Part shown: in pieces, positions 6,261 to 50,911 of the stretch
How the letters are laid out: every line of letters starts with the position of its first letter
Position numbering within the stretch: position 1 is the first letter of the stretch
The notes under the pieces: model-generated
What the model saw: only the letters and a program-made list of their open reading frames with translations
The model's database searches: none
Told to the model about the DNA's origin: nothing
Translations under genes and position numbers: made by a program
Source: Selaginella moellendorffii
Taxonomy: Eukaryota > Plantae > Lycopodiophyta
Reading direction: 5' to 3'
Length of the DNA: 64,000 bases
Assembly: GCF_000143415.4 (NCBI RefSeq)
Contig: NW_003314264.1
Span: 600,774-664,773, forward strand

Positions 6261-6293
6261 TGAAATTGCCCCATATCCAAGGCACAATTAATA

Positions 6294-6341
6294 TGGGTGG
6301 GACTTGGTGTAAACCCTAATCCCGAACGTGGAAACCCTAAA
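6294..6341 (-). promoter_or_regulatory. Telo-boxes (AAACCCTAA x2) and GTGGGAC site upstream of the HECT gene
   Basis: GGGTGGGACTTGGTGTAAACCCTAATCCC...GAAACCCTAAA lies between the transposase end and the HECT gene start; related sequence at ~24875 and ~48780. Confidence 0.45.
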
Positions 6342-6399
6342 ATTGAAGAAATCAAGAATTGAATTTACATTTGAAATGTACACTAAAGAACACTTCATT

Positions 6400-9616: not shown

Positions 9617-9639
9617 AATCCTCCAGAACACTCCATTTA

Positions 9640-25328: not shown

Positions 25329-26496
25329 TGTAAGGAACCGACTCCCCGAGATGTCGTAAGCTAAAGGATCCCCAAAAGCTTGACCGAAATGACAAAGAGT
25401 TCATCGGATGGGACTAAGTCGAGGATCGAGTCCAAGACCGACTCTAGGACCGAGTTTGAGATAGAGTCCGGAATCGAGTCCGAGACCGACTCGGGGACTG
25501 AGTTCGAGTTCGAGTTCGAGACCGAGTTCGAGACGGAGTCCGAGATCCGAAATTGGGTCCGAGACCGAGTCCGAGGTCGAGTCCGAGGTCGGGTTCGAGA
25601 TCGGGTCCGAGATCGAGTCCGAGATCGAGTCCGAGACCGAATCCGAAGTCGGATCCGAAATCGGGTCCGAGATCGAGCCAGAGACTAAGTCCAAATACTA
25701 ATACGGGTCAAGGGGTGAAAGCCCAAAGCGTGCGTCTCCTAGGGGGGGGGGGGGCTGCAGGGGGTTTCAAAAGTATAGTAGGGATAGTGAGGTAGTGAGG
25801 TCTAGGAACCAGTCTTGAAGGAACTCTCCAGTGGTGCTTCCAAACTGACTTGAGGTTGAGACTGGGGCCGAGGGGCCTTGGGTGGGAGTGAGCATGGGCC
25901 TGAGTGGTGCCGGAGGGGCCACCCAGGGAAGTGCTCAAGAGCAGCTCCCACTCCCGAAAGGGAAACCGACTGCGGTGCTCCCGGCTCAGGTGGAGTGGTG
26001 CCCCACTTGAGTACCTTGTGGCTCATTGGTCCTCGCCCTTCCTAGGGGCTTGGGCCTTCCCTTCGGGATGGAAGTGGGGGGGTAGAGGTACCCATACCGG
26101 GCCGTTATGCCACGGTGTTTCGCCCTGACATCCCGAAGCAAGTGCTGCACCCAAGACTTGGGATTTAGAGGTCCCATGATCAAGTCTTGTGGTACCAAGG
26201 GGTGTTAGGAATCTGGAGGCTTGGTGTGCTTGGCTGTTTGTGCCTGCGGGGAGTGTAGCCGAACCTTAAGTCTAGTCTAACCCGAGGAGGGGGATTGGGA
26301 GAGATTTGGGAATCCGTAGATGGATGGCTAACACTCCGTTGCTCGTGCAGTAAGTAGCTAAAACCAAGTAGGACCAAGTAGGAGCTGGTACCATAGGCGG
26401 GAACCTTGGTGAGGGAACTTAGCACAAGCCAAGGCAGAGTTGGTCGGATAGACGAGGTAAGCTGGCAAATTGGAAAGGAAAAAATTGTGGCTTACA
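25329..26496 (+). repeat. Outer 5' LTR (family B)
   Basis: TG...CA, followed by the PBS. Confidence 0.95.
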
Positions 26497-29400: not shown

Positions 29401-30414
29401 TGTTCTTCTCGAAGAAGCTGGACAAGGCTCAACGAAAGTGGCCTACCCACGAGAAGGAATTGTTTGCGGTGGTCAAGGCGCTCAAGGAGTGGCGACACTA
29501 CCTTGGGAGACACTTCAAGGTTTACACGGACAATGTGGCAACGAAACACTTCTTGTCACAGCCCGACCTAAGAGGGAAACAAGGTCGGTGGGCCAATGCC
29601 TTGGCTGGGTTTGATTGCGAGATTCTGTACAAGCCTGGGAAGAGCAACATCATGGCAGATGTGCTAAGTCGAAAAGCGAGCTTGAGGTTGGCAATATCCA
29701 GCGCAACAGCAACCTTCTGGGACGATGTGCGGACAGCATATGAGAACGATGGTCTAGCACAAGAAGTGTTGCTGAGGAATCTAGAGGCGCGGGAAGCTCA
29801 CCAGAGAGGTGAGCTGCCAACGGAAGAGAAAACGGGCTATGCGGAACGCAACGGACTCATCTATTACAAGCAAACGAGGGTGTATGTTCCAGAAGGGGAA
29901 CTAAGGAAGGTGGCCTTAGAAGAGTGTCATGACGGACCTCTTGCGGGACACGGCGGAGTGCCCGAGACGATGGGCTTACTCAAAAGGAAGTACCATTGGC
30001 CAGATATGGCTAAGGACGTCCAAGACTATGTAAAGACATGTCCAACATGTCAGCAGGTAAAAGCCGTGACTAAGGCTAGTGGGGGCTTGTTGCAAAGCAT
30101 CCCAATTCCAGATCGCCCGTGGAAATGTCTTACGATGGACTTCATCACGGGACTCCCCCCAAGCGAGGGGTTTGATGCGATATTCGTGGTAGTGGACCAA
30201 TTTTTGAAAATGGCACATTTCATACCCACCACAACGGAGGTGGATGCGGAAGGTGTGGCGAAGCTGTTCTTCGAACAAGTGGTTCGAGTGCGGGGAAGAC
30301 CGGAAGAGATCATCTCAGATCAAGATAAGATCTTCACCAGTAGGTTCTGGAGGACTTTGCTAGAACAGTATCGCACCAAGTTGAAATTCAGCACAGCCTA
30401 TCACCCACAGACAG

Positions 30415-30460
30415 GTATGGGGTATTAAGTCAAGTTGTTGGCACTAACACTTCTTGACAG
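30415..30460 (+). other. 46-nt spliceosomal intron in the integrase core (outer copy)
   Basis: GTATGG...CACTAAC...GACAG; removal restores YHPQT-D-GQTERVN. Confidence 0.88.
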
Positions 30461-30878
30461 ACGGACAAACGGAAAGGGTGAATAGGCAGCTGGAGGATTA
30501 TTTGCGATGCTATGTCTCGGGAGACCAGACCGATTGGGTAAGTCATTTGGGACTTGCGGAAATGTGTTATAACAACTCACCACATTCGAGTATCGGGGTG
30601 AGTCCATGGGAAGTCATCAATGGGCGAGCTATTGAAGGTCCTGTGGAACTCAGCGTGGCCGAGTATCATGGAGAGTTGCCCGCAGTGGAGGCATTCACGG
30701 CGGAAAGACTCAGCATTTGGAATCTAGTGAGGGATTCCTTGGAACGGGCTCAACAAAGGCAAACCAAATACGCGAACCAGAAGCGTCGGGATGTAGAGTT
30801 CCAAGCTGGGGAGAAGGTGTGGCTGAACACCAAGAACCTCAGACTACCAAGTGGGATCAGTCGAAAGTTGACCCAAAG

Positions 30879-30930
30879 GTAAAGATGCATGTATTCCTGT
30901 AAATGAATTGATCTTGAGTTCCTTAAGCAG
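30879..30930 (+). other. 52-nt spliceosomal intron in the integrase GPY/F region (outer copy)
   Basis: AG|GTAAAG...AAGCAG|G; removal restores RKLTQR-FAGPYEI. Confidence 0.88.
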
Positions 30931-31531
30931 GTTCGCGGGGCCTTACGAGATTGAGGCACGAATCGGTAAAGTGGCTTACCGACTCCGACTTCCTCGAGAG
31001 ATGGGGAAGATGCACCTAGTGTTCCACGTGAACTTACTCAAGCCGTACTTTGAGGATCTGCTTCGCAAGGACCAAGTGAGACCTTTACCTGAGGTTATCC
31101 AAGGGGAAGAGGAATACGAAGTCGAAGCCATCCTCAATGCGCGCAAGAGTAAGTGACCAGGACGCGAGGTGAGAGAGTTCCATGTGAAGTGGAAAGGATT
31201 TCCACACTGTGAAGCAACATGGGAACCGGAGGAGAACCTAGCGAACGCGCGAGATCTAGTGGAGGAATTTCTGCAAGGCAGAACTCTATGTACTTATGCA
31301 AAATTCAATTAAAAATATCAATTTGCAAAGTTGAGCAAGTGGCATATGTTGGGACCCGAAGGCGCGCCGAAGGTAAGCTAATTAGCATGGGTTGGATAGG
31401 TCGACCAGGCGTAGGGCACTACGCCCGACTCCCCACGGGGATGTCGAATCCGTAGACGTATTCTACGGAGGTTGGGTTCGAGTCCCAACCCCCTAGTAAA
31501 GCAAGGCTGGGTTCAAGTCCCGACCCCATAC

Positions 31532-34500
31532 TATAAGCCACAAATTTTTCCTTTCCACTTTGCCAGCTTACCTTGCCTATCCGTCCAACACTGCCTTGGC
31601 TTTTGCTAAGTTCCCTCGCCAAGGTTCTCGCCTATGGTACCAGCTCCTACTTGGTTTCAGCTACTCACTGCACGAGCAACGGAGTGTTAGCCATCCTTCC
31701 ACGGATTCCCAAATCACTCCCAATCCCCCTCCCCGGGTTAGACTGGACTTAAGGTTCGGCTACATTCCCCACAAGCACAAGCAGCCAAGCACACCAAGCT
31801 TCCAGGTTCCTAACATCCCTTGGTACCACAAGACTTGATCATGGGACCCTCTAAATCCCAAGTCTTGAGTGCAACACTTGCTTCGGGACGCCGGGGCGAA
31901 ACACCGTGGCCTAGCGGCCCGGTATGGGTACCTCTCGCCCCCCACTTCCATCCCGAAAGAAAGCCCAAGCCCCTAGGAAGGGCGAGGACCAATGAGCCGC
32001 ATGGTACTCAAGTGGGGCACCACTCCACATGAGCCGGGAGCACCGCAATCGGTTTCCCTTTCGGGAGTGGGAGCTGCTCTTGAGCACTTCCTTGGATGGC
32101 CCCTCCGGCACCATCCAAGTCCATGCTCACTCCCACCCAAGGCCCCTCGGTCCCAGTCTCAACCTCAAGTCGGTTTGGAAGCCCAACTGGAGAGTCCCTT
32201 CAAAACTGGTTCCTGGACCTCACTATCCCTACTATACTTTTGGAACCCCCTGCAGCCCCCCCCCCCTGGGAGACGCACGCTTTGGGCTTTCACCCCTTGA
32301 CCCGTATTAGTATTTGGACTTAGTCTCTGGCTCGATCTCGGACCCGATTTCGGATCCGACTTCGGATTCGGGTTCGGACTCGATCACGGACTCGATCTCG
32401 GACCCGATCTCGGACCCTACCTCGGACTTGACCTCGGACTCGGTCTTGGACCCGATTTCGGATCTCGGACTCCGTCTCGAACTCGGTCTCGAACTCGGAC
32501 TCGAACTCGGTCCCCAAGTCGGTCTCGGACTCGATTCCGGACTCTATCTCGAACTCGGTCCTAGAGTCGGTCTTTGACTCGATCCTCGACTTGGTCCCAT
32601 CCGATGAACTCTTTGTCATTTCGGTCAAGCTTTTGGGGATCCTTTAGCCTACGACATCTCGGGGAGTCGGTTCCTTACAACTCCACCACCCATAGAAGAA
32701 GTTCGATGCCCACATCGAACGTCTCGTTTTATCCTACGACTTGTTGTCCATGTCTCCGGGGGCATCCCCCCACTTAGCGGTGTGCCTAAGTTAGCCTCCC
32801 CGGCCAAGAGCCCATGACAACGGAATATAGGTGTCCCTATACTCCTCACCTCACCACGCCCTAGTATGGGGTCGGGACTTGAACCCAGCCTTGCTTTACT
32901 AGGGGGTTGGGACTCGAACCCAACCTCTGTAGAATACGTCTACGGATTCGACATCCCCGCGGGGAGTCGGGCGTAGTGCCCTACGCCTGGTCGACCTATC
33001 CAACCCATGCTAATTAGCTTACCTTTGGCGCGCCTTCGGGTCCCAACATATTGCACTTGCTCAACTTTGCAAATATATATTTTTAATTGAATTTTGCATA
33101 AGTACATAGAGTTCTGCCTTGCAGAAATTCCTCCACTAGATCTCGAGCGTTCGCTAGGTTCTCCTCCGGTTCCCATGTTGCTTCGCAGTGTGGAAATCCT
33201 CTCCACTTCACATGGAACTCTCTCACCTCGCGTCCTTGTCGCTTGCTCTTGCGCGCATTGAGGATGGCCTCGACTTCGTATTCCTCTTCCCCTTGGATAA
33301 CCTCAGGCAAAGGTCTCACTTGGTCCTTGCGAAGCGGATCCTCAAAGTACTGCTTGAGTAAGTTCACGTGGAACACTGGGTGCATCTTCCCCATCTCTCG
33401 AGGAAGTCGGAGTCGGTAAGCCACTTTACCGATTCGTGCCTCAATCTCGTAAGGCCCCGCGAACCTGCTTAAGGAACTCAAGATCAATTCATTTACAGAA
33501 ATACATGCATCTTTACCTTTGGGTCAACTTTCAGCTGATCCCACTTGGTAGTTTGAGGTTCTTGGTGTTCAGCCACACCTTCTCCCCAGTTTGGAACTCT
33601 ACATCCCGACGCTTCTGGTTCGTGTATTTGGTTTGCCTTTGTTGAGCCCGTTCCAAGGAATCCCTCACTAGATTCCAAATGCTGAGTCTTTCCGCCGTGA
33701 ATGCCTCCACTGCGGGCAACTCTCCATGATACTCGGCCACGCCGAGTTCCACAGGACCTTCAATAGCTCGCCCATTGATGACTTCCCATGGACTCACCCC
33801 GATACTCGAATGTGGTGAGTTGTTATAACACATTTCCGCAAGTCCCAAATGACTTACCCAATCGATCTGGTCTCCCGAGACATAGCATCGCAAATAATCC
33901 TCCAGCTGCCTATTCACCCTTTCCGTTTGTCCGTCTGTCAAGAAGTGTTAGTGCCCACAACTTTACTTAATACCCCATACCTGTCTGTGGGTGATAGGCT
34001 GTGCTGAATTTCAACTTGGTGCGATACTGTTCAAGGAGAGTCCTCCAGAACCTACTGGTGAAGATCTTATCTCGATCTGAGATGATCTCTTCTGGTCTTC
34101 CCCGCACTCGAACCACTTGCTCGAAGAACAGCTTCGCCACACCTGCCGCATCCACTTCTGTTGTGGTGGGTATGAAATGTGCCATTTTCGAAAATCGGTC
34201 CACCACCACGAATATCGCATCAAACCCCTCGCTTGGGGGGAGTCCCGTGATGAAGTCCATCGTAAGACATTTCCACGGGCGATCTGGAATTGGGATGCTT
34301 TGCAACAAGCCCCCACTAGCCTTAGTCACGGCTTTTACCTGCTGACATGTTGGACATGTCTTTACATAGTCTTGGACGTCCTTAGCCATATCTGGCCAAT
34401 GGTACTTCCTTTTGAGTAAGCCCATCGTCTTGGGCACTCCACCGTGTCCCGCAAGAGGTCCGTCATGACACTCTTCTAAGGCCACCTTCCTTAGTTCCCC

Positions 34501-36737
34501 TTCTGGAACATACACCCTCGTTTGCTTGTAATAAATGAGTCCGTTGCGTTCCGCATAGCCCGTTTTCTCTTCCGTTGGCAGCTCACCTCTTTGGTGAGCT
34601 TCCCGCGCCTCTAGATTCCTCAGCAACACTTCCTGTGCTAGACCATCGTTCTCATATGCTGTCCGCACATCGTCCCAGAAGGTTGCTGTTGCGCTGGATA
34701 TTGCCAACCTCAAGCTCGCTTTTCGACTTAGCGCATCCGCCACGATGTTGCTCTTCCCAGGCTTGTACAAAATTTCGCAATCAAACTCGGCCAAGGCGTT
34801 GGCCCACCGACCTTGTTTCCCTCTTAGGTCGGGCTGTGACAAGAAGTGTTTCGTTGCCACATTGTCCGTGTAAACCTTGAAGTGTCTCCCAAGGTAGTGT
34901 CGCCACTCCTTGAGCGCTTTGACCACCGCAAACAATTCCTTCTCGTGGGCAGGCCACTTCCGTTGAGCCTTGTCCAGCTTCTTCGAGAAGAACGCTACCG
35001 GATGGTTGTCTTGCTTCAAAACTGCGCCCAACGCAAAGTCCGAAGCATCCGTTTCTACCTCAAAGTCCTTACCAAAGTCTGGTAATGCCAATACGGGAGC
35101 CTTCCTCAACTTCCCTTTGAGGTGGACGAATGCCGCCTCGCATTCCACTGTCCACACCATCTTCCCTTTTCCTGTTTGGTCCGTTAAGGGCAGGGCTACT
35201 CTCGAATAGTGTCTGATAAACTTTCGATAGTAGTTGCATAGCCCCAGGAATGCCCTCAACTCGTGTACATTGGATGGTCGCTCCCATTCCTGGATCGCTT
35301 GGACCTTCTCCGGGTCCACCTTGAGCCCGTCCTGGCCCACCACATGCCCGAGAAACTTTACCTCTTGTTGAGCAAAGTCACATTTGCTCTCTTTAGCATA
35401 CAGCTTGTGTTCCCTTAGTTTCTCAAACACCTTCGCCAAGTGTTCGGCATGCTCCTCTAGCGTCTCGCTATAGATCAGGATGTCGTCGATATAGATGACC
35501 ACGAAGTGATCCAGATAGGGTACAAAGACGTGGTTCATTAGCGCCAAAAACGTTGCCGGCGCATTACATAGCCCGAAGGGCATCACCAGAAACTCAAAGC
35601 TCCGATACCAAATTGTAAGCCACAAATTTTTCCTTTCCACTTTGCCAGCTTACCTCGCGTATCTGTCCAACACTGCCTTGGCTTTTGCTAAGTTCCCTCG
35701 CCAAGGTTCTCGCCTATGGTACCAGCTCCTACTTGGTTTCAGCTACTCACTGCACGAGCAACGGAGTGTTAGCCATCCTTCCACGGATTCCCAAATCACT
35801 CCCAATCCCCCTCCCCGGGTTAGACTGGACTTAAGGTTCGGCTACACTCCCCACAAGCACAAGCAGCCAAGCACACCAAGCTTCCAGGTTCCTAACATCC
35901 CTTGGTACCACAAGACTTGATCATGGGACCCTCTAAATCCCAAGTCTTGAGTGCAACACTTGCTTCGGGACGCCGGGGCGAAACACCGTGGCCTAGCGGC
36001 CCGGTATGGGTACCTCTCGCCCCCCACTTCCATCCCGAAAGAAAGCCCAAGCCCCTAGGAAGGGCGAGGACCAATGAGCCGCATGGTACTCAAGTGGGGC
36101 ACCATTCCACATGAGCCGGGAGCACCGCAATCGGTTTCCCTTTCGGGAGTGGGAGCTGCTCTTGAGCACTTCCTTGGATGGCCCCTCCGGCACCATCCAA
36201 GTCCATGCTCACTCCCACCCAAGGCCCCTCGGTCCCAGTCTCAACCTCAAGTCGGTTTGGAAGCCCAACTGGAGAGTCCCTTCAAAACTGGTTCCTGGAC
36301 CTCACTATCCCTACTATACTTTTGGAACCCCCTGCAGCCCCCCCCCCCTGGGAGACGCACGCTTTGGGCTTTCACCCCTTGACCCGTATTAGTATTTGGA
36401 CTTAGCCTCTGGCTCGATCTCGGACCCGATTTCGGATCCGACTTCGGATTCGGGTTCGGACTCGATCACGGACTCGATCTCGGACTCGATCTCGGACCCG
36501 ACCTCGGACTTGACCTCGGACTTGGTCTTGGACCCGATTTCGGATCTCGGACTCCGTCTCGAACTCGGTCCCCGAGTCGGTCTCGGACTCGATTCCGGAC
36601 TCTATCTCGAACTCGGTCCTAGAGTCGGTCTTGGACTCGATCCTCGAGTTGGTCCCATCCGATGAACTCTTTGTCATTTCGGCCAAGCATTTGGGGATCC
36701 TTTAGCCAACGAAATCGCGGGGAGTCAGTTCCTTACA
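31532..36737 (-). mobile_element. Inner, inverted, internally deleted family-B chromovirus
   Basis: LTRs at 31532-32679 and 35614-36737; perfect TSD CATAC (31527-31531, 36738-36742); PBS fused directly to RT; PPT at 32680-32693. Confidence 0.95.
33083..35600 (-). pseudogene. Truncated pol (partial RT, RNase H, integrase, chromodomain) of the inner element
   Basis: YIDD, VETDASDFALG, VVVDRFSK, ISDRD and a complete chromodomain; same introns at 33935-33980 and 33465-33516; one TGA at ~33531. Confidence 0.93.
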
Positions 36738-36926
36738 CATACTAGGGCGTGGTGAGGTTAGGGGTATAGGGACACCTATATTCCGTTGTCATGGGCTCTT
36801 GGCCGGGGAGGCTAACTTAGGCACACTACTAAGTGGGGGGATGCCCCCGGAGACATGGTCAACAAGTCGTAGGATAAAACGAGACGTTCGATGTGGGCAT
36901 CGAACTTCTTCTATGGGTGATGGAGT

Positions 36927-38083
36927 TGTAAGGAACCGACTCCCCGAGATGTTGTAGGCTAAAGGATCCCCAAAAACTTGACCAAAATGACAAAGAGTTC
37001 ATCGGATGGGACCAAGTCGAGGATCGAGTCCAAGACCGACTCTAGGACCGAGTTCGAGATAGAGTCCGGAATCGAGTCCGAGACCGACTTGGGGACCGAG
37101 TTCGAGTCCGAGTTCGAGACCGAGTTCGAGACGGAGTCCGAGATCCGAAATCGGGTCCGAGACCAAGTCCGAGGTCGAGTCCGAGGTCGGGTCCGAGATC
37201 GGGTCCGAGATCGAGTCCGAGATCGAGTCCAAGACCGAATCCGAAGTTGGATCCGAAATCGGGTCCGAGATCGAGCCAGAGACTAAGTCCAAATACTAAT
37301 ACGGGTCAAGGGGTGAAAGCCCAAAGTGTGCGTCTCCCGGGGGGGGGGGGCTGCAGGGGGTTCCAAAAGTATAGTAGGGATAGTGAGGTCCAAGAACCAG
37401 TTTTGAAGGGACTCTCCAGTTGGGCTTCCAAACCGACTTGAGGTTGAGACTGGGACCGAGGGGCCTTGGGTGGGAGTGAGCATGGACTTGGGTGGTGCCG
37501 GAGGGGCCATCCAAGGAAGTGCTCAAGAGCAGCTCCCACTCCCGAAAGGGAAACCGATTGCGGTGCTCCCGGCTCATGTGGAGTGGTGCCCCACTTGAGT
37601 ACCATGCGGCTCATTGGTCCTCGCCCTTCCTAGGGGCTTGGGCTTTCTTTCGGGATGGAAGTGGGGGGCGAGAGGTACCCATACCGGGCCGCTAGGCCAC
37701 GGTGTTTCGCCCCGGCGTCCCGAAGCAAGTGTTGCACTCAAGACTTGGGATTTAGAGGTCCCATGATCAAGTCTTGTGGTACCAAGGGGTGTTAGGAATC
37801 TGGAGGCTTGGTGTGCTTGGCTGTTTGTGCCTGCGGGGAGTGTAGCCGAACCTTAAGTCCAGTCTAACCCGGAGAGGGGGATTGGGAGAGATTTGGGAAT
37901 CCGTAGATGGATGGCTAACACTCCGTTGCTCGTGCAGTAAGTAGCTAAAACCAAGTAGGACCAAGTAGGAGCTGGTACCATAGGCGGGAACCTTGGCGAG
38001 GGAACTTAGCACAAGCCAAGGCAGAGTTGGTCGGATAGACAAGGTAAGCTGGCAAATTGGAAAGGAAAAAATTGTGGCTTACA
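36927..38083 (+). repeat. Outer 3' LTR (family B), mosaic
   Basis: Preceded by PPT ATGGGTGATGGAGT; TG...CA ends. Confidence 0.95.
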
Positions 38084-40716
38084 CCAGCATAATCCTACAA
38101 AAGCAAAATTAATAAAGAATTCTGTAACATTACTAAAATTCTTACCCAAACTCTCATTCCATCGGTTGAAATAAGTTTGCAGGAACATGAGATGGTCTAA
38201 AGTAATCACCACATCGATATGGATAGACCTCATGGACGTTCCAGGTTGCAACCCAATGTGAAATATCCTTCTTGAGGTATAGAGCAAAACCACAACATAG
38301 ACTCTGGTTGTGCTATGGATTAGATACATTGAGAATTCCTATATCTTCCATGGACTCAAAAAGGTGTTTATAAAACCACACCGCGCACTCAAAGAGTTCT
38401 CTCCACAAATGCTCTATAGGCTGTAAAACAAATTTGATTTAGTCCTTATTTGGAAAAACTTTAATGCTGTGAGTACCTGGTTACATGTTGATGTCCCACA
38501 TATGAAGCTCCTAGCTGTAGGACCCCAACAGCGGACCATGTCCCTCTCAACCTCATTGTGTTCTGGAGCATTGTCGCTTCGGATGTGCTTGGGCCTTACA
38601 AATCAACGAACAGCCTGTGCATATGTGTTGAATATTGCATGGGATTTTTTGGAGGTAATTAGCTCGCAAGCTACAATATAATGAGTTGCCCGGAAAACAA
38701 TGGCACGTACATCGAAACCATAGCTTACAAGCTTGCAATATGCTACAATAAGCATATTACCACATGTGTTGACAAAAAAAAAGAAATGAAAGAATACTCA
38801 CAATCCATATGGCAAAGTGCATATGCCTCGTCGTTCTTATAAATCCATTGTCGAATCCTTGTCATGTGCCTTTGTTCCAGCCTACTGGGATCATGAGTGG
38901 CTAAAGCCTCACAAATTTGGCATCGGCAAAACTGGTATCCTCCAGTTCGACAGCTAGATTGGGAATTGATAATCCCCCAGTTTGTGCCACCTCAATTCAT
39001 GGCATTGTTATTTCGAACGTGATGAAGTACCTCTTCGGGTGGTACTTTGTAATATACACCTCTACAATTTAGATCAACAAGCTGCATCTATTTGTATAGT
39101 GTTGGCTTAGAAATTCTAAGATAGCATGCGAGGTAAAAGCAGTAGTCTTAGTCTTGAGGATTGTCAGGTGCATCCAAGTGCCAAATGCAGCTAGACTACC
39201 GAATGCCCTCGATTGCAAAAAATTATAGAAAGCCTAGAAACGTGCAAATCATGAATTTAGAAGGCTAGAAACTAAGCAAACCTCTAGGAGAGCATCATTG
39301 TCACTATCCATACTGGAACCGCAGTCTGAATCACTAAAATTGGATGGAAGGCCATCCATGTTGTCTTCCTCGTCTTCCAGTAACCTAGATGAAAAAGTTT
39401 CAGTGACACAAATTTGAAGTAAACTAGCGAGGGAACTATACTCATGGTAAGAACTTGAAAGTCTATAGAGAGCAATCGAGTAGTAAATCAAAGCTAGTTC
39501 CAACACTGCCCACGAAAACATTTGAAACCAATCACTAGCAAACCAAGTTAACTTCCACATCTGCTACCAAGAAACATGTGCTTTCCATCGCACTTTAGGG
39601 TTAATTTCTTAGTGGGGCAGCTTGCACCCTGCTGCCATGACCAGGCGCTAAAGCAAGGAAGCATCTCCTAAACCCTATGACCTAATGAATCCCTATGTCA
39701 TGGGGTCAAACTTGATGATATGTGACATCTATGTATAGAACATTGTTCATATTATGGGGACATCATCAACCCATCGGGCCAGCATCCATGGGGTATCCAT
39801 GAGGGATCCAAATGACATTTAATGCCAAACCAATAGAAAACTGCCACATGGACACTGTATTGTGAGTGAAATTTGCTACAGTAACACTCACCCTTTTACA
39901 AATTGCACACCATAGCTTGTTTAAGCAGCTTTTATGTATAGGTATGCTCATCCCTCTAGACATTGTGAATAGGGCTTCAGTCACATTATTTCAATTTAAG
40001 GTTTTTAGGTTTTTTTGCTATTTTGTAAGAGCTGCTCTCTTTCTTTAGAGTGTTAGATGGACTCTTCACATGGTATTAGAGGCATAATGCTTTAGACATT
40101 AGGTGTCATCTCTATCCTCTTGGAGAAATGGAGCAATGAATTTCCTTGATGCAAAATTCTGGTTTATGAGGTGGGGATTTTGGCTTGTGGTGTCTAGAAT
40201 GACAAAATGATAAAAGTTGATAAAGGTTTGTGGGTTTATTTTTTATTGCTTGGCTTGTTGCCACACATTGCCATTTACAGTTGCATTGTGTGGCAAAATC
40301 ATCTATACTAACAATAAAATCAGTTTTCAACAATTATACAAATGCATATATGTGGTGAGTGTAAGCAATCTTGAGTTTGAGTTTTTATTACTACAAGTGG
40401 TTTTTAAGATTGCATATTTGAGACTTTTCCTTTTTGTTTCATACTTTTTAATTTTTTTTTCCTTCCCTTTATTTTTATTTTCTTTCTTTTTACATTTACT
40501 TCCATCACTTTGGCCTTCCCATCAATGTTTCTGTTCAATATTTTTATTTTGCTCCTTTATTTCTCAAATCCCTCCAACAATCTTTATATTATAGCAATTG
40601 ACTAGCTCAAGAAAGAGTATTCTAATCTCTTCAACTTTGAATTATTATCCTCAAGCAAAAGCCAAAATTGGCATTGCTTTGAAAGTGCAAGCTTGTGGAC
40701 ATAAATTTGCCATCAA

Positions 40717-42797: not shown

Positions 42798-42851
42798 TAT
42801 GGCATGCAATTCATAAAAGGGTGGATTTTACAACGGTGGATTTCATTCACA
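42798..42851 (+). repeat. Left TIR, copy 3
   Basis: TATGGCATGCAATTCATAAAAGGGTG...GATTTCATTCACA. Confidence 0.88.
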
Positions 42852-43589
42852 CTAGGTGTATGTGTACTATTGGTCCATGTGTATCAAAACACAAGCATAG
42901 AATATTTTACGAATATCCAATCCTTATGCCCCAAATGGGCATCATGCTTATAACAATGACCCATGCTATGTATGGAATGGCGCTATTCATGGCCCATATA
43001 CCCATTCATCCCATGCATTCTAGCAAGTTGTTAATGTTGTAAACCAAATGGACAATTGACTAAATTGTATACCATATTACTTTATCTAGGGTACTATATT
43101 CTCACATCTTGCTCTTGGCGCTCATGGCAAAAGAATTAAATTATCCTTTTCTGGCACACCTCTTTTAACATAGTGTTCATAACAAGTGTAAGTGGACTCC
43201 ATTTAGCTCCATTGCAAAGCCATGGATATATACTATCTGGAGTCATGTCTCTAATGCATCCCATTGAGTTTATATTTCGTTGCCATTGATTTCCAGTGTA
43301 GCTCTCTCAACACTTTAGTTTTGTACCAAGATGCTTAGAAGATTTGCATATGACTCAAAAGTAAGTTGAAGTCTAACTAATTTGATGAATTGGTGGGGTT
43401 TATATTTCAATTGTGTACTACGTAAAGGTGCATAGTGTTGATGTTTGGACCTGGAGTTCTCTCAACAAGAGCATGCTAAAGGAGATTTAGGAATGTGGAA
43501 GTTGTAATTGCATGTAGTAACATTTAGGATAACAAAAGACACTTTCAACATTTTTCAATTAAAATTTTCAATAATTTTCAAATTGGACC

Positions 43590-44424
43590 TGGAGTTATCT
43601 CAAGAGGAGCATGCTAAAGGAGATTTGAGAATATGGAAGTTGCAATTGCATGCAGTAACATTCAGGTGAGAAGAGCAATAACAATGGACACTTACAATAT
43701 TTCCAATCATAATTATTTCAAATTTTGAAATTTGTAAAAAGGGTTTCCAAGCATGGGGCAAAACTATCCAATGTATCCTGTGTGCTACAGCCAAAGAACT
43801 GGAGTTTTCAGGGATTGAAAGTTCGTACTCACTTTGGTAAGAGTATATTTGTGATAGTTTCCTATATGCTCTAACCCTTTTGCAATGTTTGAAGTTTCTA
43901 AGTTTACTCCTAGCATGGCAAACTGGAGAGGATTCTATGACTTTTTTGAGGCACAATAATGGATCCAACAAGGGATAGGACCAAGGATTCTATATAATGC
44001 CTCCTCCTCTCAAGGCTTGACAATCCCTCCAACAAGGCAACCCAAGACTACTTCTAATGTTGTGCCAATCACTGAGGGGAAAGGTCTTGCTAAAGAAAGC
44101 GATAGCAAGGGATATGTTACTACTCGAGATGCAAGCAAGGACGAGTTCACAGACCTAGAGGGTGATTTTGGTTCTACCATGAAACAAGCTAAGAGTTCCT
44201 CAAGCAAGGATGAGTATCATATAGCACCCAAGCTCAATAGTTTTGACCCAGATCCTAAATTGGGAGTTGCTTTGGAAGCTAAAGTGATTACCCTTGGTGA
44301 GGCAAGCATAAGCCAAAAGGGTACTAGGGCCCCAAATGCCTATAATGGGCATTTGTGGAATATTTTGAATATTCTTACCTTTAACTTTGTTAATGAACTG
44401 GAAAGAGTCTCTTTCAAAGTGTGA
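43590..44424 (+). pseudogene. Possible third, convergent spliced gene of the TIR transposon (function unknown); also at ~12370-13127
   Basis: Copy 2 can be spliced as ...VAIACNNIQ|GFQAWGKTIQYMLHATTEELDFSGIGSSCSLW|...; the terminal exon is open for over 100 codons in both copies (12798-13127, 44017-44424). Confidence 0.35.
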
Positions 44425-44469
44425 CACATATTTCAAGATAATTATCTATTTTTATTGTGAAAGTGTTTA

Positions 44470-47400
44470 GATTATGGTACTTCCACAACATCAACCTAAT
44501 CCATACAAGCTCTCTAGATTTTGGAGTGCCCGGGTGGATCTTGTGTTTGGTCCACTCCATTGACGTGTATGTTAAAGGGAAGAAAACTTCTCGTGTGCAT
44601 GTGGAGAACCTGGGAAATCGAGTAGATGATGTACCCTGTCTCTCAATGTGGATCCAAATAGGCTCTCCCGATCAGAACTCTAGAGAATCAACCGCAAAGT
44701 GATGGAACTTGGATAACTCTTTCAGGCTCATATTTATAAAATGTTCAAACATACAAGAGTTTTAGTTATTTGTGAAAGTAAATAGTTACCTCGAATGATA
44801 TCCACAATCCAGCTATGGAAGTTCTCTCCAAAGTCTTAATCAAAGATTAGGCAGTTGATGACCTCTACGGGAGGAATGATCATCCTTACCTGGAAGACCT
44901 GTAACAAAGCATCTCTCCCAATGAGTGAAAGCCCACCTAGCAATGCTGAACTTTTGTAAGGCCTCTGATGAGCTTCCATGCGTATTGAGTATTGGAAGCC
45001 ATCTCAGACTAAGGCTCCCACTACATTTGGCTCGATGAATAGGTGATGCCAGACCACCGCAGCCACACATGCTTCCACAGCCTGCTCATAACCTTCACCA
45101 AGTTCGGTGAGTCTAGACTCAAGCACTGTGTTGTAGTCGGTAATTGCAAGGTTCTCTAGGATGGAATCCACAGACTTGTGCTGATCACCCTCCTCCTTTA
45201 GGCTTGATGCACCTTGCAATTGGTTGAGTGCATTCCAGATATGCGGCACGTATACCTTGAGGTTCATCTCATATAGTCCTCCTCGGGCAAATCATTGGTC
45301 ATTCTCATTTAGAACCTCTCGGGCTGCAATTGCTAATATTGCAATTGTACACCCGCGAAATACTTGTGCATTACATTCGAACGCTTGGAATAGCAACCAT
45401 GCCACAAAGATAGCCTGTGCATATAGAAATGAGGAGCATATAAAACTTGTGCTTTAAACTTAACTTACCACATCCCGCTCATCTTGTCACAACGTCCTAG
45501 AATGCATTGGCATCCTGGAATGCCAATACGTGGCTCCTTCCCTAAGCACAAACAGTTCACGCGTCTATAACACAAAGTTACTTTAGTGAGCCAAGTGAAA
45601 ATTAAACTTACCGATCCTGGAATTTGGTGAATACTAATGGCTTTTGCATGTGGCCCACCCACATCTATTGTGGATTCCTCCCACACCAAAGCTCCTCCAA
45701 TCTCAGACGTATAGACCACTTTGTAATCTGGTATGCGGAGATTAGTATTGAAGGTGAACTAGAAACAATTAAATTCATTGTTTGGTGCAATGAGGGAACT
45801 CCAATTCATAGGCAATCCATTGCTTACCAGAATGCAAGATGGCCTCAAACGTGTACAAGCAAGTTTGTATAGCTGAAACATGGCCTTTTCGATGCAAAAA
45901 CAAGAGAACTTATAATACAGTGTTTCAGCAATGTCAAATAATTGTCTCAATTGTTGTGCAGCTGCCCAATTCTTAGGTAGGTCCCTACACAAAACAATAA
46001 GATGGTACTAAGTGCTAAAATATAAATACACGTACCTCTTCTCAATGAACCATGCTATTATGGACTCAACAATTAAAAGAGGCACATTGATACTTACTTT
46101 AGCAAGGAGTTGTTGGATTGTGTTGTTACAAAACACATCCTCGTACTGTGCATCTGAAAGGCTAAATTTAAGGAGAACACTCTCCCAATCCTGCCAATGA
46201 GGCATGGCTTGGCTGAAAAAGCACGCGCGGAAGAAATATTTCACCGCCAGCCCGATGGAACTCAAGGTGTTTATCAATAGTGTCTAGCATATATTCGTCA
46301 CTTGTGCTCTCCACGCTAAAGCAACCAAGAAGCTTGTGTTTCAACTATTGCACCTGTGATAGAACTTTAGCATCCCTCTATGCCCTCATCTCAAGGGCTA
46401 TGGTGGCATCCTGTAAGGCAAAAACCTCCTCATACTACAGCATGATGAAGTTAGCACTATCTTGAGTGGTTAACTGAACAACTTCATTAAATGCATTAGT
46501 GGCATCAATCCATCATTGTTGACGCTCCAACAATCTACATGCAAATGTTAGTTCAATTTTGAATGGCATAATTTTTAATTATCTTACTCTACTGTAGAAA
46601 AGTTGTCAAGCAACTCCATAAGAGTAAGTGAAGTGGAGCTCCTTCCCTCTAGAAAGGGGGGTGGAGGCACACCATGGTCTTCAAGGCCTCCACCATCATT
46701 GTCATAGGCATATTTACACTCAAAAATTAGAAAATGAAGAAAATAATCATTTATGTTAATACTTTTTACCAGCTGTATAGCCTGGAGCCACTATCTCTAG
46801 TGACAAGGATGTCTCCAGAGATCTTTACTGCAGTTCATCCCCACCATCACCTTGTTCTTCGACTCCAGTGATGTCCATGTTGTCTTGTGTGGGGAGAGTT
46901 TCTTTTGGTAATGGAAGAATATCCTCTTCATCTGTAGAGTCTTCTTCTTTATTATTCTCATTTTGGTTTGGTTCCTGCATGGGGAGAAATGGCTTTATCA
47001 CCAAGGGATCATCATTTGCAGTCAAGGTATTTGTAGCAACTACAACTGCAAAGACCACAACATATATTTGTGAGGAGGGAACTTAAAAAACAAAATAACT
47101 TATATTCATAAATATTCTTCTCTTTGAATGCTTGGGCTTGTTTTTGATAACTTAGCCAATGTTTGTCAATATGATGCTCCATAATATTGTATAGGTATAT
47201 TATTGTTACCTGGTTGCTATTGGCCTTGTTTGTTATAGCTCCCCATGATGTTAGAGGAGGCCAGTAGCAAGGCCAAATAGAGCTGAGGCCAAATTTTGCA
47301 AACTCGGCATGGGCCTCACCACCATTGGACTACCTTGCATGTTGGACAAATGCTTCTGGGTTGGTCATGGATGAAGGTTGGATTCTTGAGGCTTGGAGTG

Positions 47401-48730
47401 ATAGTAGAATCGCATGTTGGGCCGTGCCGGGCTAGAAAGGAATACTGGAGTATAAGCCACCCCATATGAGACACTCTGGGAGGTCCACTACCAGCTCATC
47501 AAGTTCTGTCACCTTCACAGATGGCTCTCTTTTCTACCCATACAAGTGTGCATGCCAAGTCTTCGGGATTGCAATCCACTTGGTGATAAGAACTGTGGTG
47601 AACGGCCAGGGGACCAAAGGTGTCATAGATGACATCCCACCAATGACTTTGGATTGACTGCCATGATGTCCATGACGACAAGATAAGGACTGCCGATTGT
47701 TATCAGCTTAGGTGTGCACTGCAGCCACAAGTGGTCAGAGAGTCTAGCACAGTGAAATGAAAATGAGTTAAACAAATCCAAAGAAAAAAAAAATGAAGAG
47801 TGCATGGGGTCATGTTATACCTGTGGCTCATATGGCAGCCCGCCTTGAGTGTCAGCTTGAACATATTTGGATGTCGAAGCTCCACTAAATGATGATGTTG
47901 ATCCTTGGGAGTAGTTGTGGAATGCTAATAGGGAACTATAAGCTCGCTGGTGTGGCAGCATTGTCAACTCACCCTACGTAGAAAAACATATGGAAAAATG
48001 ACGGGTACAAATGAAAAACTTACCGAGCTAGACCACTTGTTGCTTCGGGAGGTAGATGGGCCAGGTACTGGCACTTGTACCAGTAGATGGAGTTGCAAGA
48101 GTTGTAGCGGCTGGTGGAGTTGCGGGGCTAGTAGCAGTGGCACTATATGGGGTTCCATGAGCACGTCCTGTAGTTGGTGTTGGTGGCAGCATTCTAGATT
48201 GGATGACACCGTAGGCATGAGGCATCCGGACTTGCTTGTTTCAGACACTCGGGCTGCTACTTTCCAAGGAAGGCAAGGAGAAGGAAACATGCTGGAGGTT
48301 TTGCATATGTTGTAGTGTATGCAATGTTAGGCGGCACTCTATTTGCTCAAATGCAGTCAGGAGCTGTAGATGGGATGCTGTTGGAGTTGATGTCCTTGTT
48401 GCGAAGCTTGGAAAATCAAGTGGTTGGCGTGTGTCTCGTAGGATTGTTAGCTGTACCAATTGCAAAACATTGAGTGCTTAGTTGCGTGCTCACAAGGTGT
48501 TTCCTGCATAGTGTCTATTGGTATTGAGGCGTGCAGCATTCTTGCTTCGAGCCTAGAAACCACAAGGGATTGGTTATGCAAACCTAATCGAGGAGAAGCT
48601 ACCCACCATCACAACTGTGGCGCTCTTGCTTGGGCGGTGGTCCTACGATTAGGGGAGTGTGCACTAGAAGCCTTTCCTCCGGTTAGATGACACGAATCGA
48701 TTGGAAGAATGAACAAACCATTGACAAAAT
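44470..48730 (-). pseudogene. Multi-exon HECT E3 ubiquitin-ligase-like gene, copy 3
   Basis: N-lobe KVVY...EESTIDVGGP (45651-45720, cf. GExxxDxGG). C-lobe ELSKFHHFAVDS...TSSTRFPRFSTCTREVFFPLTYTSMEWTKHKI (cf. LPxAHTCxxxLxLPxYxSxE), with the Cys codon at 44597-44599. Exon boundaries are approximate. Confidence 0.72.
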
Positions 48731-48879
48731 CATGTCATAAAATGAAATTGCCCCATATCCAAGGCACAATTAATAATGGTGGGACTTTGTGTAAACCCTA
48801 ATCCCGTGGGAACCCTTAATTTGAACAAATCAAGAATTGAATTTAAATTTGAAATATATACTAAAGAACACTCAATTTT

Positions 48880-50504
48880 CTCCGAGTATGGCTAAGTATA
48901 ATTTTTCAAAAGCTCATCACTTCACCGATGTTACTGTAGGCAATTGCTTGTCCAAGTTGAGTCCCTCCCGATGCATAAAAAATGCCTGGTTCTGAACAGT
49001 GCTAAGAGCCTGTAAGGTAGCCAAACACAATGAAATAGATTTAAAAAAATTGTTCTATTTTTGTTCTAAAGATTACCTTTGACAGAGTTGCACCTTCAAC
49101 ATTGGAGAGAAATGGTCTAGGAACGTTTTTAATATCTTTTCCACCAACAGCCGGCATAATTCTACAAAAGCACAATTTATAAAGAATTCTGTAACGTTAC
49201 CAAAATTTTTACCCAAGCTCTCATTTCATCGGTTGAAATAGGTTTGTAGAAATATGAGATGGTCTGAAGTAATCATCACATCAATACGAATGGACCTCAT
49301 GGAGGTTCCAGGTTGCAACCCAATGTGAAATATGCTTCTTGAGGTACGAAGCAAAGACACAACATAGACTCTAGTTGTGCACATCGAGAATTCCCATATC
49401 TTCCATGGACTCAAAAAGGTGCTTATAAAACCACACCATGAACTCAAAGAGCTCTCTCCACAAATGCTCTATGCGCTATAAAACAAATTTGATTTAGTCC
49501 TTATTTGGAAAAACTCTAATGCTGTGAGTACCTGGTTACGTGTTGATGTCCTACGTATGAAACTCTTAATTGCAAGACCCCAATAGTAGACTATGTCGCT
49601 CTCAACCTCATTGTGCTCTAGAGCATTGTCGCTCCAAATGCACTTGGGCCTTCCAAATTGACAGATAGCCTATGTATATGTGTTGAATATTGCATAGGAT
49701 TCTTTGGAGGTAGCTAGCTTACAAGCTACAATATAATGAGTTGCCCCACAAATAATGGCATGTACATAGAAACCATAGCTTACAAGCTTGCAATATGCTA
49801 CAATAATCTTGTTCCCACATGTGTTAACAAAAAAGCAGAAATGAAAGAATACTCTCAATCCACATGGCAAAGTGCATAAGCCTCCTTGTTCTTGTCCGTC
49901 GTTGAATCCTTGTCATATGCCTCTGTTCTAGTCTACTTGGATTGTGAGTGGCTAAGGCCTGGCGTCGGCTAAACCAGTATCCTCCAATTCGATAGCTAGA
50001 TCGAGAATTGATAATCCCCCAATTTGTGTCACCTCAATTCATGGCATTGTTAGTTTGAACATGATGAAGTGCCTCTTTGAGTGGTACTCTATAATATACA
50101 CCTCTCCAATTTCGATTGATCATGTATTTGTATAGTGTTGGCTTAGAAATTCTAAGATAGCATGCGAGGTAAGCAGTAGTCTTAGTCTCGAGGATCTTCA
50201 AGTGCATCCAAGTGCCAAATGCGGCTGGACTACTGAATCCCCTCGATTGCAAAAAATTATAGAAGGCCTAGAAACATATAAATCATGAATTTAGGAGGCT
50301 AGAAACTAAGTAAACCTCTAGGAGAGCATCATTGTCACTATCCATATTGGAACCACAATCCGAATCACTAAAATTGGATGGAAGGCCGTCCATCTTGTCT
50401 TCCTCCACGTCTTCTAGTAAAGTTGGAAAAAAAAGCTTTAATGATACAAATTTGAAGTAAACTAGGGAGGGAACTATACTCATGGTAGGAATTTGAAAGT
50501 CCAT
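48880..50504 (-). pseudogene. DDE transposase, copy 3
   Basis: LLE|AFYNFLQSRG...RISKPTLYKYM; YCKLVSYGFYVHAIICGATHYIVACKLATSK; IEHLWRELF; WNLHEV; multiple stops. Confidence 0.82.
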
Positions 50505-50857
50505 AGAGAGCAATCGAGTAGTAAATCAAAGCCACTTCCAACACTACCCATAAAAACATTTAAAACCAATCACTAGCAAACCAAGTTACTTTCCACATTT
50601 GCTACCAAGAAACATGCCGAATAACAAAGCACTAAAGCAGGGCACTAAGACAAGGAAGCATCTCCTAAACCCTATGACCTGATGAATCCCTATGTTATGG
50701 GGTCAAACTTGATGATATGTGGCATATATGTAGAACACATTATTCATATTATGGGGATATCATCGACCCATTAGGCAAGCATCCATGGGGTATCTATGAG
50801 GCATCCAAATGACATTTAATGCCGAACCAATAGAAAACTGCCATATGGACATTGTAT

Positions 50858-50911
50858 TGTGAGTGAAATCTATTGCAGTAACACTCACCCTTTTACAAAT
50901 TGCATGCCATA
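50858..50911 (-). repeat. Right TIR, copy 3
   Basis: Reverse complement reads TATGGCATGCAATTTGTAAAAGGGTG...GATTTCACTCACA. Confidence 0.88.

What the first reader, a model, noticed from the sequence alone, without database searches (positions are those of the whole stretch)
44470..48730. Transposon-borne divergent HECT E3 ligase with retained catalytic Cys
EESTIDVGGP and RFPRFSTCTREVFFPLTYTSMEWTKHKI match the first and last HECT motifs with roughly HECT-sized spacing. The Cys is kept in both copies that retain this region (44597-44599 and ~13375). The gene has a long S/T/P-rich N-terminus and its own telo-box promoter. Inference: an accessory factor that ubiquitylates host silencing/chromatin proteins or the transposase, rather than a passively captured fragment.
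Basis: partly seen in the sequence, partly recalled or inferred. Interest (0 to 1): 0.75.

Follow-up and report, generated by a model that had tools for sequence, protein, structure and literature searches.

The report
Dead HECT-ligase gene inside GingerRoot transposon
The stretch is a broken copy of a divergent HECT-type ubiquitin-ligase gene that sits next to the integrase inside a GingerRoot/IS3EU DNA transposon of the clubmoss Selaginella moellendorffii, a cargo I found in no paper on these transposons.

Summary

The gene lies on the minus strand of an 8.1-kb element (42798-50911). This element has TAYGG..CCRTA ends and an rva_4 integrase, so it is of GingerRoot/IS3EU type. Other copies in Selaginella moellendorffii end exactly at these inverted repeats, with 5-bp target duplications.

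HECT identity cannot be shown from the window's own pieces. It shows only through the one intact paralogue, P0002:
- Pfam HECT is its only hit, E 2e-4, below the curated cut-off.
- All 30 Atlas feature hits are HECT clusters, and the Atlas structure search gives TM about 0.6 over about 300 residues.
- The Cys lies 34 residues from the C-terminus.

The window copy is dead, with 10 stops and 3 frameshifts. Of 13 copies, 12 are broken. The window's three copies are tandem duplicates of one insertion, so "Cys kept in both" is not independent evidence.

A weak signal of past purifying selection falls on the HECT part (p = 0.018). The proposed function is untested.

The scan noted this family before: s1-432101, and s1-419785, whose follow-up found no HECT.

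The parts
42798..50911 (-). Copy A of the GingerRoot/IS3EU-type TIR transposon (8114 bp). It holds the integrase gene, then the HECT-like gene, both on the minus strand.
   Evidence: Inverted repeat I4. Copies in loci L001, L002 and L004 align from exactly 50911 to exactly 42798. The terminal motif was searched.
42798..42854 (.). Terminal inverted repeat at the 3' end of the element in gene orientation. It starts with TATGGCATGC.
   Evidence: 57 nt, 79% complementary to 50855-50911.
50855..50911 (.). Terminal inverted repeat at the 5' end of the element in gene orientation. It ends with GCATGCCATA.
49229..50525 (-). Decayed integrase/transposase gene: HTH region plus a DDE core of Pfam family rva_4, split by small introns and by stops.
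   Evidence: Open stretches. rva_4 is seen weakly on piece 49472-49669 and better on the sister copy at 6990-7276; HTH_17 hits 7668-7904. rva_4 scores 51 bits on the paralogue model P0015.
50667..50674 (-). Telo-box (TAGGGTTT on the coding strand) about 240 nt inside the 5' end, upstream of the integrase gene.
   Evidence: kept in all full copies.
48793..48800 (-). Telo-box between the integrase gene and the HECT-like gene.
   Evidence: kept in 7 of 8 copies that cover it.
47183..48600 (-). S/T/P-rich 5' part of the HECT-like gene. It is included in public models P0005 and P0015 of paralogues. Its exon structure is unresolved.
44491..47182 (-). Pseudogene equivalent to the 747-aa public model P0002. 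Its ten exons are 47182-47104, 47045-46770, 46713-46588, 46534-46390, 46353-46036, 45984-45828, 45791-45612, 45564-45469, 45414-44790 and 44733-44491.
   Evidence: Exon map of P0002 on L002, transferred through the copy alignment. Introns of 47-57 nt with GT-AG ends are conserved in the copies.
44491..45761 (-). The HECT-like domain part (P0002 residues 376-747), broken here by six of the ten stops and a 1-nt insertion at 44534.
   Evidence: for HECT identity; for the breaks.
44597..44599 (-). Codon of the candidate catalytic Cys (TGC; P0002 Cys713, 34 residues before the C-terminus).
44017..44424 (+). Small acidic ORF (135 aa) convergent with the HECT-like gene, inside the element's 3' region. 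It is open or nearly open in most copies.
   Evidence: It is annotated as a 127-151-aa gene in L001, L004 and L011.
11523..39914 (-). Copy B of the same insertion (a tandem duplicate). It is split by an LTR retrotransposon at 16151-23481 and by nested elements at about 25046-38080. Its HECT part lies at about 13276-16030.
4043..8549 (-). Copy C (a tandem duplicate). It keeps the integrase and the 5' part of the HECT-like gene and has lost the HECT part.

Best explanation
The stretch is a decayed copy of the second gene of an 8.1-8.5-kb TIR DNA transposon family of Selaginella moellendorffii, of GingerRoot/IS3EU type.

Shown here:
- The element has TAYGG..CCRTA ends, inverted repeats of about 57 bp and 5-bp target duplications.
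- It carries an intron-bearing rva_4 DDE integrase. Downstream on the same strand lies a gene with 8-9 tiny introns.
- The product of that gene has an S/T/P-rich and acidic N-terminal half and a divergent HECT domain as its last ~370 residues. The candidate catalytic Cys is 34 residues from the end.
- The window copy is dead. It belongs to a three-unit tandem duplication of one insertion plus about 2.9 kb of flank.

Inferred:
- While the family was spreading, the gene was a working element-encoded E3 ubiquitin ligase, expressed from its own promoter (marked by a telo-box) separately from the integrase.
- It helped the element by ubiquitylating a protein target. The target is most plausibly a host silencing or chromatin factor, or the integrase itself after strand transfer. 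It is unknown.

The confidence given covers the whole statement, including the inferred part. The shown part alone I put at about 0.85-0.9.
For: Element:
- Inverted repeats at 42798-42854 and 50855-50911.
- Copies on other scaffolds of GCA_000143415.2 end exactly at those positions with different flanks. Their 5-bp duplications are GAATG, GCTCA and TTTTT.
- rva_4 integrase.
- TA..TA and TAYGG..CCRTA ends match those described for IS3EU/GingerRoot (PMC10045372, PMC12730594, PMC6839031).

HECT identity:
- The big search with the first motif exon found only S. moellendorffii models.
- The intact 747-aa model P0002 has HECT as its sole Pfam hit: residues 656-741 on profile positions 213-301 of 306, 21.4 bits, E 2.2e-4. 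P0015 gives the same at 20.7 bits.
- All 30 Atlas feature hits for residues 375-747 are HECT clusters (score 0.94, 178-199 shared features). The Atlas structure search gives TM 0.57-0.61 over 298-314 residues to HECT proteins.
- UniRef's own name for P0002 is 'HECT domain-containing'.
- The Cys is kept in 11 of 13 copies.

Real gene structure: introns of 47-57 nt with GT-AG ends are conserved across copies.

Selection:
- On lineage-internal branches of the copy tree, non-synonymous:synonymous changes are 82:49. On terminal branches they are 610:242 (p = 0.04).
- In the HECT part the counts are 34:28 against 291:120 (p = 0.018).
- The N-terminal part, the shifted reading frames and the post-duplication branches show no such effect.

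Promoter: there are exactly two telo-boxes per element on the coding strand, one before each gene, in all full copies.
Against: - The Pfam score is below the curated cut-off (21.4 against 23.9 bits).
- Sequence searches of PDB with P0002 or with a family profile found nothing.
- My own AlphaFold model was too poor to use (pLDDT 43). The fold evidence therefore rests on the Atlas's own model, which has pTM 0.48.
- 12 of 13 copies are broken. The one open copy (L002) sits beside an integrase with a frameshifting deletion, so no copy was seen with both genes intact.
- Pairwise pN/pS (0.67) is no lower than in shifted frames (0.43 and 0.64).
- The selection signal rests on about 60-130 changes and was found after splitting the gene in two.
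- All copies were retrieved through the HECT-like gene, so I cannot say whether family members without it exist.
- Two public models (P0015, P0016) join integrase and HECT into one protein.
- There are no expression data.
Confidence: 0.55

Rival explanations
1. Passive cargo. A host HECT gene, or most of one, was picked up by a GingerRoot element and was amplified and then decayed without ever serving the element. GingerRoot elements are known to pick up gene fragments.
For: In S. lepidophylla, 28.6% of GingerRoot elements carry host gene fragments with their introns (PMC6839031). The gene has host-style tiny introns. Nearly all copies are pseudogenes. Pairwise pN/pS is not below the shifted-frame controls.
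Against: The captured pieces described in that paper are fragments of 84-1654 bp, never whole genes. Here a complete C-terminal HECT domain with its stop, a long N-terminal region and an upstream telo-box are all present. No close non-transposon parent turned up in the big search or the word searches, though those searches have limited reach. The domain is so divergent that Pfam barely sees it, which does not fit a recent capture. There is a weak purifying-selection signal on lineage branches in the HECT part only.
Confidence: 0.27
2. One protein, not two. The HECT domain is the C-terminal part of the transposase itself, an integrase-HECT fusion, and acts in cis, for example by ubiquitylating the integrase or the target chromatin at the insertion site.
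For: Both genes lie on the same strand, about 270 bp apart. Public models P0015 (1299 aa) and P0016 (1200 aa) join them.
Against: Other annotations of equally good copies call two genes (L002 and L004). A conserved telo-box sits in the gap. The joined models come from copies with stops, and P0015 skips parts of the integrase core. No transcript data are available.
Confidence: 0.12
3. The one intact copy (L002, SELMODRAFT_407700) is a domesticated host gene. All the others, including the window's copy, are its dead transposon relatives.
For: L002 is the only open copy of 13, and the integrase beside it is broken.
Against: L002 still lies inside a complete element with both inverted repeats and a target duplication. 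It is 97% identical to the broken copy L001. With a terminal branch of about 0.01 substitutions per site, an open frame by chance is not unlikely (my estimate). No orthologue evidence exists.
Confidence: 0.08
4. Not a HECT domain at all. The motifs would be a chance resemblance in a transposon protein of another fold.
For: No significant match comes from the window's own pieces. The Pfam hit is below the gathering score. An earlier follow-up on another copy of this family reported no HECT in any test (s1-419785).
Against: HECT is the only Pfam hit, at E 2e-4, in two paralogues, and the profile's end meets the protein's end. Atlas gives 30 of 30 HECT clusters and structural TM about 0.6 over the whole 370 residues. 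The first motif, the Cys and the C-terminus have HECT spacing.
Confidence: 0.07

Closest known systems
GingerRoot / IS3EU DNA transposons (Cerbin et al. 2019, PMC6839031; Kojima 2023, PMC10045372; Kojima 2025, PMC12730594)
   Same: TIR element with TA..TA ends, more exactly TAYGG..CCRTA as in fungal IS3EU. It has an integrase-like DDE transposase without an HHCC finger (Pfam rva_4) and an HTH N-terminus. Its host is a lycophyte, the plant group in which GingerRoot was described. Its size, 8.1-8.5 kb, is within the reported 3.9-12.9 kb.
   Different: The target duplication is 5 bp in three of three clean copies, not the 6 bp reported. The inverted repeats are about 57 bp, not 100-150 bp. It carries a whole HECT-like gene. 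Neither 'HECT' nor 'ubiquitin' occurs in the GingerRoot paper, and no paper in the library holds both IS3EU and HECT.
HECT-type E3 ubiquitin ligases (Pfam PF00632); nearest Atlas clusters are small HECT-only proteins of oomycetes and chordates
   Same: A C-terminal domain of about 370 residues. It starts with a V-x-[FW]-x-x-E-x-x-x-D-x-G-G-P type motif. The Cys lies in a P-x-x-S-T-C context, 34 residues from the end, and an aromatic residue sits four from the end. The fold match comes from the Atlas model.
   Different: It is very divergent, below Pfam's cut-off and with no PDB hit by sequence. It has no recognisable substrate-binding domain upstream. It is encoded inside a transposon, and it has no demonstrated activity.
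Accessory enzymes carried by DNA transposons, such as TET/JBP dioxygenase and alpha-kinase genes in fungal IS3EU and other superfamilies (PMC12730594). From my own knowledge: VANC anti-silencing proteins of Arabidopsis VANDAL elements and ULP1-like proteases of MULE/CACTA elements.
   Same: A second, non-transposase enzyme gene sits in a fixed position and orientation inside the element. It plausibly acts on the host's silencing or protein-modification machinery.
   Different: The enzyme class (an E3 ligase) does not appear as transposon cargo in any paper I could search. The evidence for function here is only a weak selection signal.
Gene-fragment capture by GingerRoot (Pack-type elements, PMC6839031)
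   Same: Host-style introns lie within sequence carried between GingerRoot ends.
   Different: This is a complete gene rather than a fragment of 84-1654 bp. No close parent gene was found. It occupies the same place in every full copy retrieved.

Membership tests
HECT domain (PF00632) | Profile match at or above the curated Pfam gathering score | tested here: not met
   P0002 scores 21.4 bits and P0015 20.7 bits against a cut-off of 23.9. The E-values are 2.2e-4 and 3.7e-4, and HECT is the only non-integrase hit at E below 0.1. The window's own exon pieces give no hit.
HECT domain (PF00632) | Domain at the extreme C-terminus, with the catalytic Cys about 32-36 residues from the end | tested here: met
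   Cys713 of 747 in P0002. Profile positions 213-301 of 306 map to residues 656-741. The same register holds in the window copy once the 1-nt insertion at 44534 is allowed for.
HECT domain (PF00632) | Bilobed HECT fold over about 350 residues | tested here: inconclusive
   The Atlas's own model of P0002 matches HECT proteins at TM 0.57-0.61 over 298-314 residues, and all 30 feature hits are HECT. My AlphaFold model was unusable (pLDDT 43) and Foldseek on it gave noise.
HECT domain (PF00632) | Ubiquitin thioester on the Cys and E2 binding | not testable with these tools
   This needs an in vitro assay.
GingerRoot / IS3EU superfamily | Integrase-related DDE transposase without an HHCC finger | tested here: met
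   rva_4 (PF24764) scores 51.1 bits on P0015 and 41 bits on P0016, and hits consecutive exons of the window copies. An HTH lies upstream.
GingerRoot / IS3EU superfamily | Terminal inverted repeats ending TA..TA (TAYGG..CCRTA) | tested here: met
   TATGGC..GCCATA in the window and in the five loci where I read an intact terminus (L001-L005). The motif has 8 sites in the window against 0.2 expected.
GingerRoot / IS3EU superfamily | 6-bp target site duplication | tested here: not met
   The duplication is 5 bp in L001 (GAATG), L002 (GCTCA) and L004 (TTTTT). The window shows a degenerate CAAAT/CAAAC.
Pack-type captured gene fragment | A recognisable host parent gene with high identity, of which only a fragment is carried | tested here: not met
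   Only transposon copies were found by the big search and the word searches, and a whole domain with its stop is carried. Those searches were limited in sensitivity and in candidate length, so a distant parent is not excluded.

The most novel reading that the evidence does not exclude
HECT-only E3 ligases may be an old, recurrent partner of IS3EU/GingerRoot integrase transposons across kingdoms. The nearest Atlas clusters to this domain are small HECT-only proteins of oomycetes and of chordates (one cluster has 606 members). GingerRoot-type elements are reported from Phytophthora and from many ray-finned fishes. If those genes also sit beside rva_4 integrases between TAYGG..CCRTA ends, this would be a class of transposon-encoded ubiquitin ligases used against host control.
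Probability: 0.15. Interest if true: 0.85.

Novelty: new variant of a known kind. Interest (0 to 1): 0.55.

Why it matters
Transposons are known to carry proteases, deubiquitinases, demethylation enzymes and anti-silencing proteins. I found no paper in the library describing a transposon that carries a ubiquitin ligase.

If the ligase was active, it would be a transposon that tags proteins for the host's own degradation system, much as some plant viruses do. That gives a direct handle on how integrase-type DNA transposons deal with host silencing, or with removal of their own integrase.

It also warns annotators. The dozen 'hypothetical' and 'HECT domain-containing' Selaginella gene models of this family are transposon genes, most of them pseudogenes.

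Tried and rejected
Searches that found nothing useful:
- Pfam on ten single open stretches of the window gave no HECT.
- PDB sequence searches found nothing relevant with three pieces, with P0002 or with the family profile.
- The word search with the first motif piece found nothing. The two later word searches found only Selaginella transposon copies.
- The Atlas on the 97-aa piece returned noise.
The scan with P0002 found no relatives.
- Literature searches for IS3EU+HECT, G2E3+transposon, 'HECT domain'+'DNA transposon', and G2E3-like found nothing relevant.

A weaker query than intended: half of the 97-aa piece used for the big search turned out to be intron or wrong frame. The search still found the family.

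Structure prediction: AlphaFold on P0002 with a 13-row alignment of near-identical paralogues gave pLDDT 43, and Foldseek on that model was meaningless.

Readings considered and dropped:
- The 11-kb repeat as an LTR element with 4.5-kb LTRs. The independent copies end at the inverted repeats, so the repeat is a tandem duplication of element plus flank.
- An 'FVTG' HECT motif in the frame at 45085-44843. The intact paralogue uses another frame there.
- Pairwise dN/dS. It is uninformative here, because the in-frame value is no lower than in shifted frames.
Full report
**Observation.**
- On the minus strand, the first motif lies in the open stretch 45758-45468 and the last motif in 44671-44417.
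- The Cys codon is TGC at 44599-44597. The second copy has it at about 13376-13374.
- S/T/P-rich frames lie upstream at about 48477-47967.
- A telo-box lies at 48793-48800.

Taken alone, these pieces are not statistically recognisable as HECT. Pfam on ten open stretches gave nothing. PDB sequence searches gave nothing relevant. A word search gave nothing, and the Atlas on the 97-aa piece gave noise.

**What the window holds.**
- Self-comparison and a search for the terminal motif show three tandem units. Each unit is one 8.1-kb element plus about 2.9 kb of flank.
- Copy C is 4043-8549 and is truncated.
- Copy B is 11523-39914. It is split by an LTR retrotransposon at 16151-23481 and by nested elements at about 25046-38080.
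- Copy A is 42798-50911 and carries the finding.
- The flanks are repeated too, so the three copies descend from one insertion. Shared features such as the Cys therefore say nothing about selection.

**The element.**
- Copy A is bounded by 57-nt inverted repeats starting TATGGCATGC.
- The big protein search with the first-motif exon of copies A and B (alignment A1) found 14 proteins. Twelve are models of this family, and the six named by a source are Selaginella moellendorffii. The other two (P0013, P0014) are weak hits to repetitive, unrelated sequences.
- I fetched eleven loci from assembly GCA_000143415.2, on ten scaffolds.
- Full copies in L001, L002 and L004 align from exactly 50911 to exactly 42798 of the window, with unrelated flanks. 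Their 5-bp target duplications are GAATG, GCTCA and TTTTT.
- L010 shares the window's spacer, so it is not an independent insertion.
- The upstream gene is a DDE integrase of Pfam family rva_4 with an HTH N-terminus.
- TA..TA ends, more exactly TAYGG..CCRTA, are the published mark of IS3EU/GingerRoot (PMC10045372; PMC6839031; PMC12730594). GingerRoot was described in a Selaginella species.
- The family differs from the published description in having a 5-bp, not 6-bp, duplication and shorter inverted repeats.

**The gene.**
- The public model P0002 (SELMODRAFT_407700, 747 aa) maps to locus L002 as ten exons. Eight introns measure 47-57 nt and have GT-AG ends conserved across copies. The ninth, a 36-nt 'intron', is itself open and may be coding.
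- Through the alignment of copies, the exons in the window are 47182-47104, 47045-46770, 46713-46588, 46534-46390, 46353-46036, 45984-45828, 45791-45612, 45564-45469, 45414-44790 and 44733-44491.
- Models P0005 and P0015 extend the gene upstream through the S/T/P-rich region. That part's exon structure is unresolved.
I searched pieces by reference and used the public model of the intact paralogue. In scripts, codons were read only in alignment register.

**Is it a HECT domain?**
- P0002 has HECT as its only Pfam hit: residues 656-741 on profile positions 213-301 of 306, 21.4 bits, E 2.2e-4. This is below the 23.9-bit cut-off. P0015 gives the same at 20.7 bits, next to its rva_4 hit.
- For residues 375-747 the Atlas returns HECT clusters for all 30 feature hits (score 0.94, 178-199 shared features).
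- The Atlas's own model matches HECT proteins (E6AP-like, HERC-like, HACE1, HECTD3, NEDD4-like) at TM 0.57-0.61 over 298-314 residues.
- UniRef itself names P0002 'HECT domain-containing'.
- The first motif sits at residues 399-412. The Cys is residue 713, 34 residues before the end, and an aromatic residue lies four from the end.
- Against this, PDB sequence searches with P0002 and with a family profile found nothing. My AlphaFold model was useless (pLDDT 43).
- I put HECT homology at about 0.9.
- An earlier follow-up on another copy of this family (s1-419785) found no HECT signal. My result differs because I reached the intact paralogue.

**State of the copies.**
- In codon register, the window's copy A has ten in-frame stops. 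Their first bases are 46827, 46515, 46437, 46347, 45761, 45489, 45294, 45006, 44838 and 44674. Eight of the ten fit single C-to-T or G-to-A changes relative to L002.
- Copy A also has a 10-nt deletion after 46707, 1-nt insertions at 46220 and 44534, and several lost splice sites.
- Of 13 copies, only L002 is open. The others have 3-20 stops.
- The Cys is kept in 11 copies, deleted in L005 and changed to Tyr in L009.
- L002's integrase has a frameshifting deletion in its core. I did not assess the integrase in the other copies.

**Selection.**
- Pairwise pN/pS in frame (0.67) is no lower than in shifted frames (0.43 and 0.64).
- The copy tree is star-like, so most differences are neutral decay after insertion.
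- With parsimony on the 13-copy tree, changes on lineage-internal branches run 82 non-synonymous to 49 synonymous. Terminal branches run 610:242 (p = 0.04).
- In the HECT part the counts are 34:28 against 291:120 (p = 0.018).
- No such effect appears in the N-terminal part, in the shifted frames, or on branches that reflect post-insertion duplication.
- This is a weak hint that the HECT domain was constrained while the family was active.

**One gene or two.** Each element has exactly two telo-boxes on the coding strand. One lies about 240 nt from the 5' end, before the integrase. The other lies in the gap between the integrase and the HECT-like gene, and it is conserved in the copies. Annotations disagree: two genes in L002 and L004, one fused model in L001 and L003. 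I favour two genes, but only transcripts can settle it.

**Mechanism.**
- Shown: this is a GingerRoot/IS3EU-type element that carries a divergent HECT-like gene of proper gene structure, amplified together with the integrase to at least about ten loci, and now almost entirely decayed.
- Inferred: it was an element-encoded E3 ligase that helped the element. The target is unknown. Host silencing or chromatin proteins, or the integrase after strand transfer, are the obvious candidates.
- Rivals: passive cargo, an integrase-HECT fusion, domestication of the L002 copy, or no HECT at all.

**Comparison and novelty.** IS3EU elements with accessory enzymes (TET/JBP, alpha-kinase) are known in fungi, and GingerRoot captures host gene fragments. 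Neither 'HECT' nor 'ubiquitin' occurs in the GingerRoot paper. No paper in the library links IS3EU, or DNA transposons generally, with a HECT gene. I class it as a new variant of a known kind.

**Not done.**
- A metagenome scan found no relatives.

Noticed in passing
window 44017-44424 (+); L001 12377-12967 (-), L004 10271-10861 (-), L011 10939-11512 (-): A small acidic, Ser-rich ORF (135-151 aa) lies convergent with the HECT-like gene inside the element's 3' region. It is open or nearly open in most copies: 3 stops in about 1080 codons, against about 1 per 100 codons in the HECT-like gene. It has no Pfam family and could be a third element gene.
   Followed up: partly
window 4043-53601: The element plus about 2.9 kb of flank forms a three-unit tandem array with a period of about 11 kb and 87-97% identity between units. 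Locus L010 (GL377614.1) carries a further copy with the same spacer.
   Followed up: partly
window 50949-51264 versus 39973-40180 and 8587-8897: A segment of about 316 bp, 37 bp outside the element's end, is inverted in the unit after copy A relative to the other two units. Identity reaches 99-100% over parts of it. It could be a flipped segment or a small foldback insertion.
   Followed up: no
window 16151-23481; inverted relative at about 53660-56338: An LTR retrotransposon (LTRs 16151-17829 and 21830-23481, 91% identical) is inserted into the 5' part of copy B's HECT-like gene. A related, inverted copy cuts the array at 53601.
   Followed up: no
L003 about 9481-10074: A roughly 590-bp insertion made of two direct repeats of about 270 bp sits in intron 2 of the HECT-like gene of that copy. 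It is probably a small non-autonomous element.
   Followed up: no
window 43063-43076 and 11786-11799; L002 12416, L004 11828: A copy of the terminal motif (TATGGTATGCAATT) lies about 270 bp inside the element's 3' end, in the same orientation as the 5' end's motif. It may be a subterminal binding-site repeat.
   Followed up: no
window 42103-42609 (-): The repeated spacer holds a 168-aa ORF with a coiled-coil-like QLRKEKEQLRKEK run. Its nature is unknown.
   Followed up: no
window 44491-47182 and loci L001-L011: Most stops in the decayed copies arise at CGA, CAG/CAA and TGG codons, that is by C-to-T or G-to-A changes. This is what deamination of methylated cytosines in silenced transposons would produce.
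   Followed up: partly
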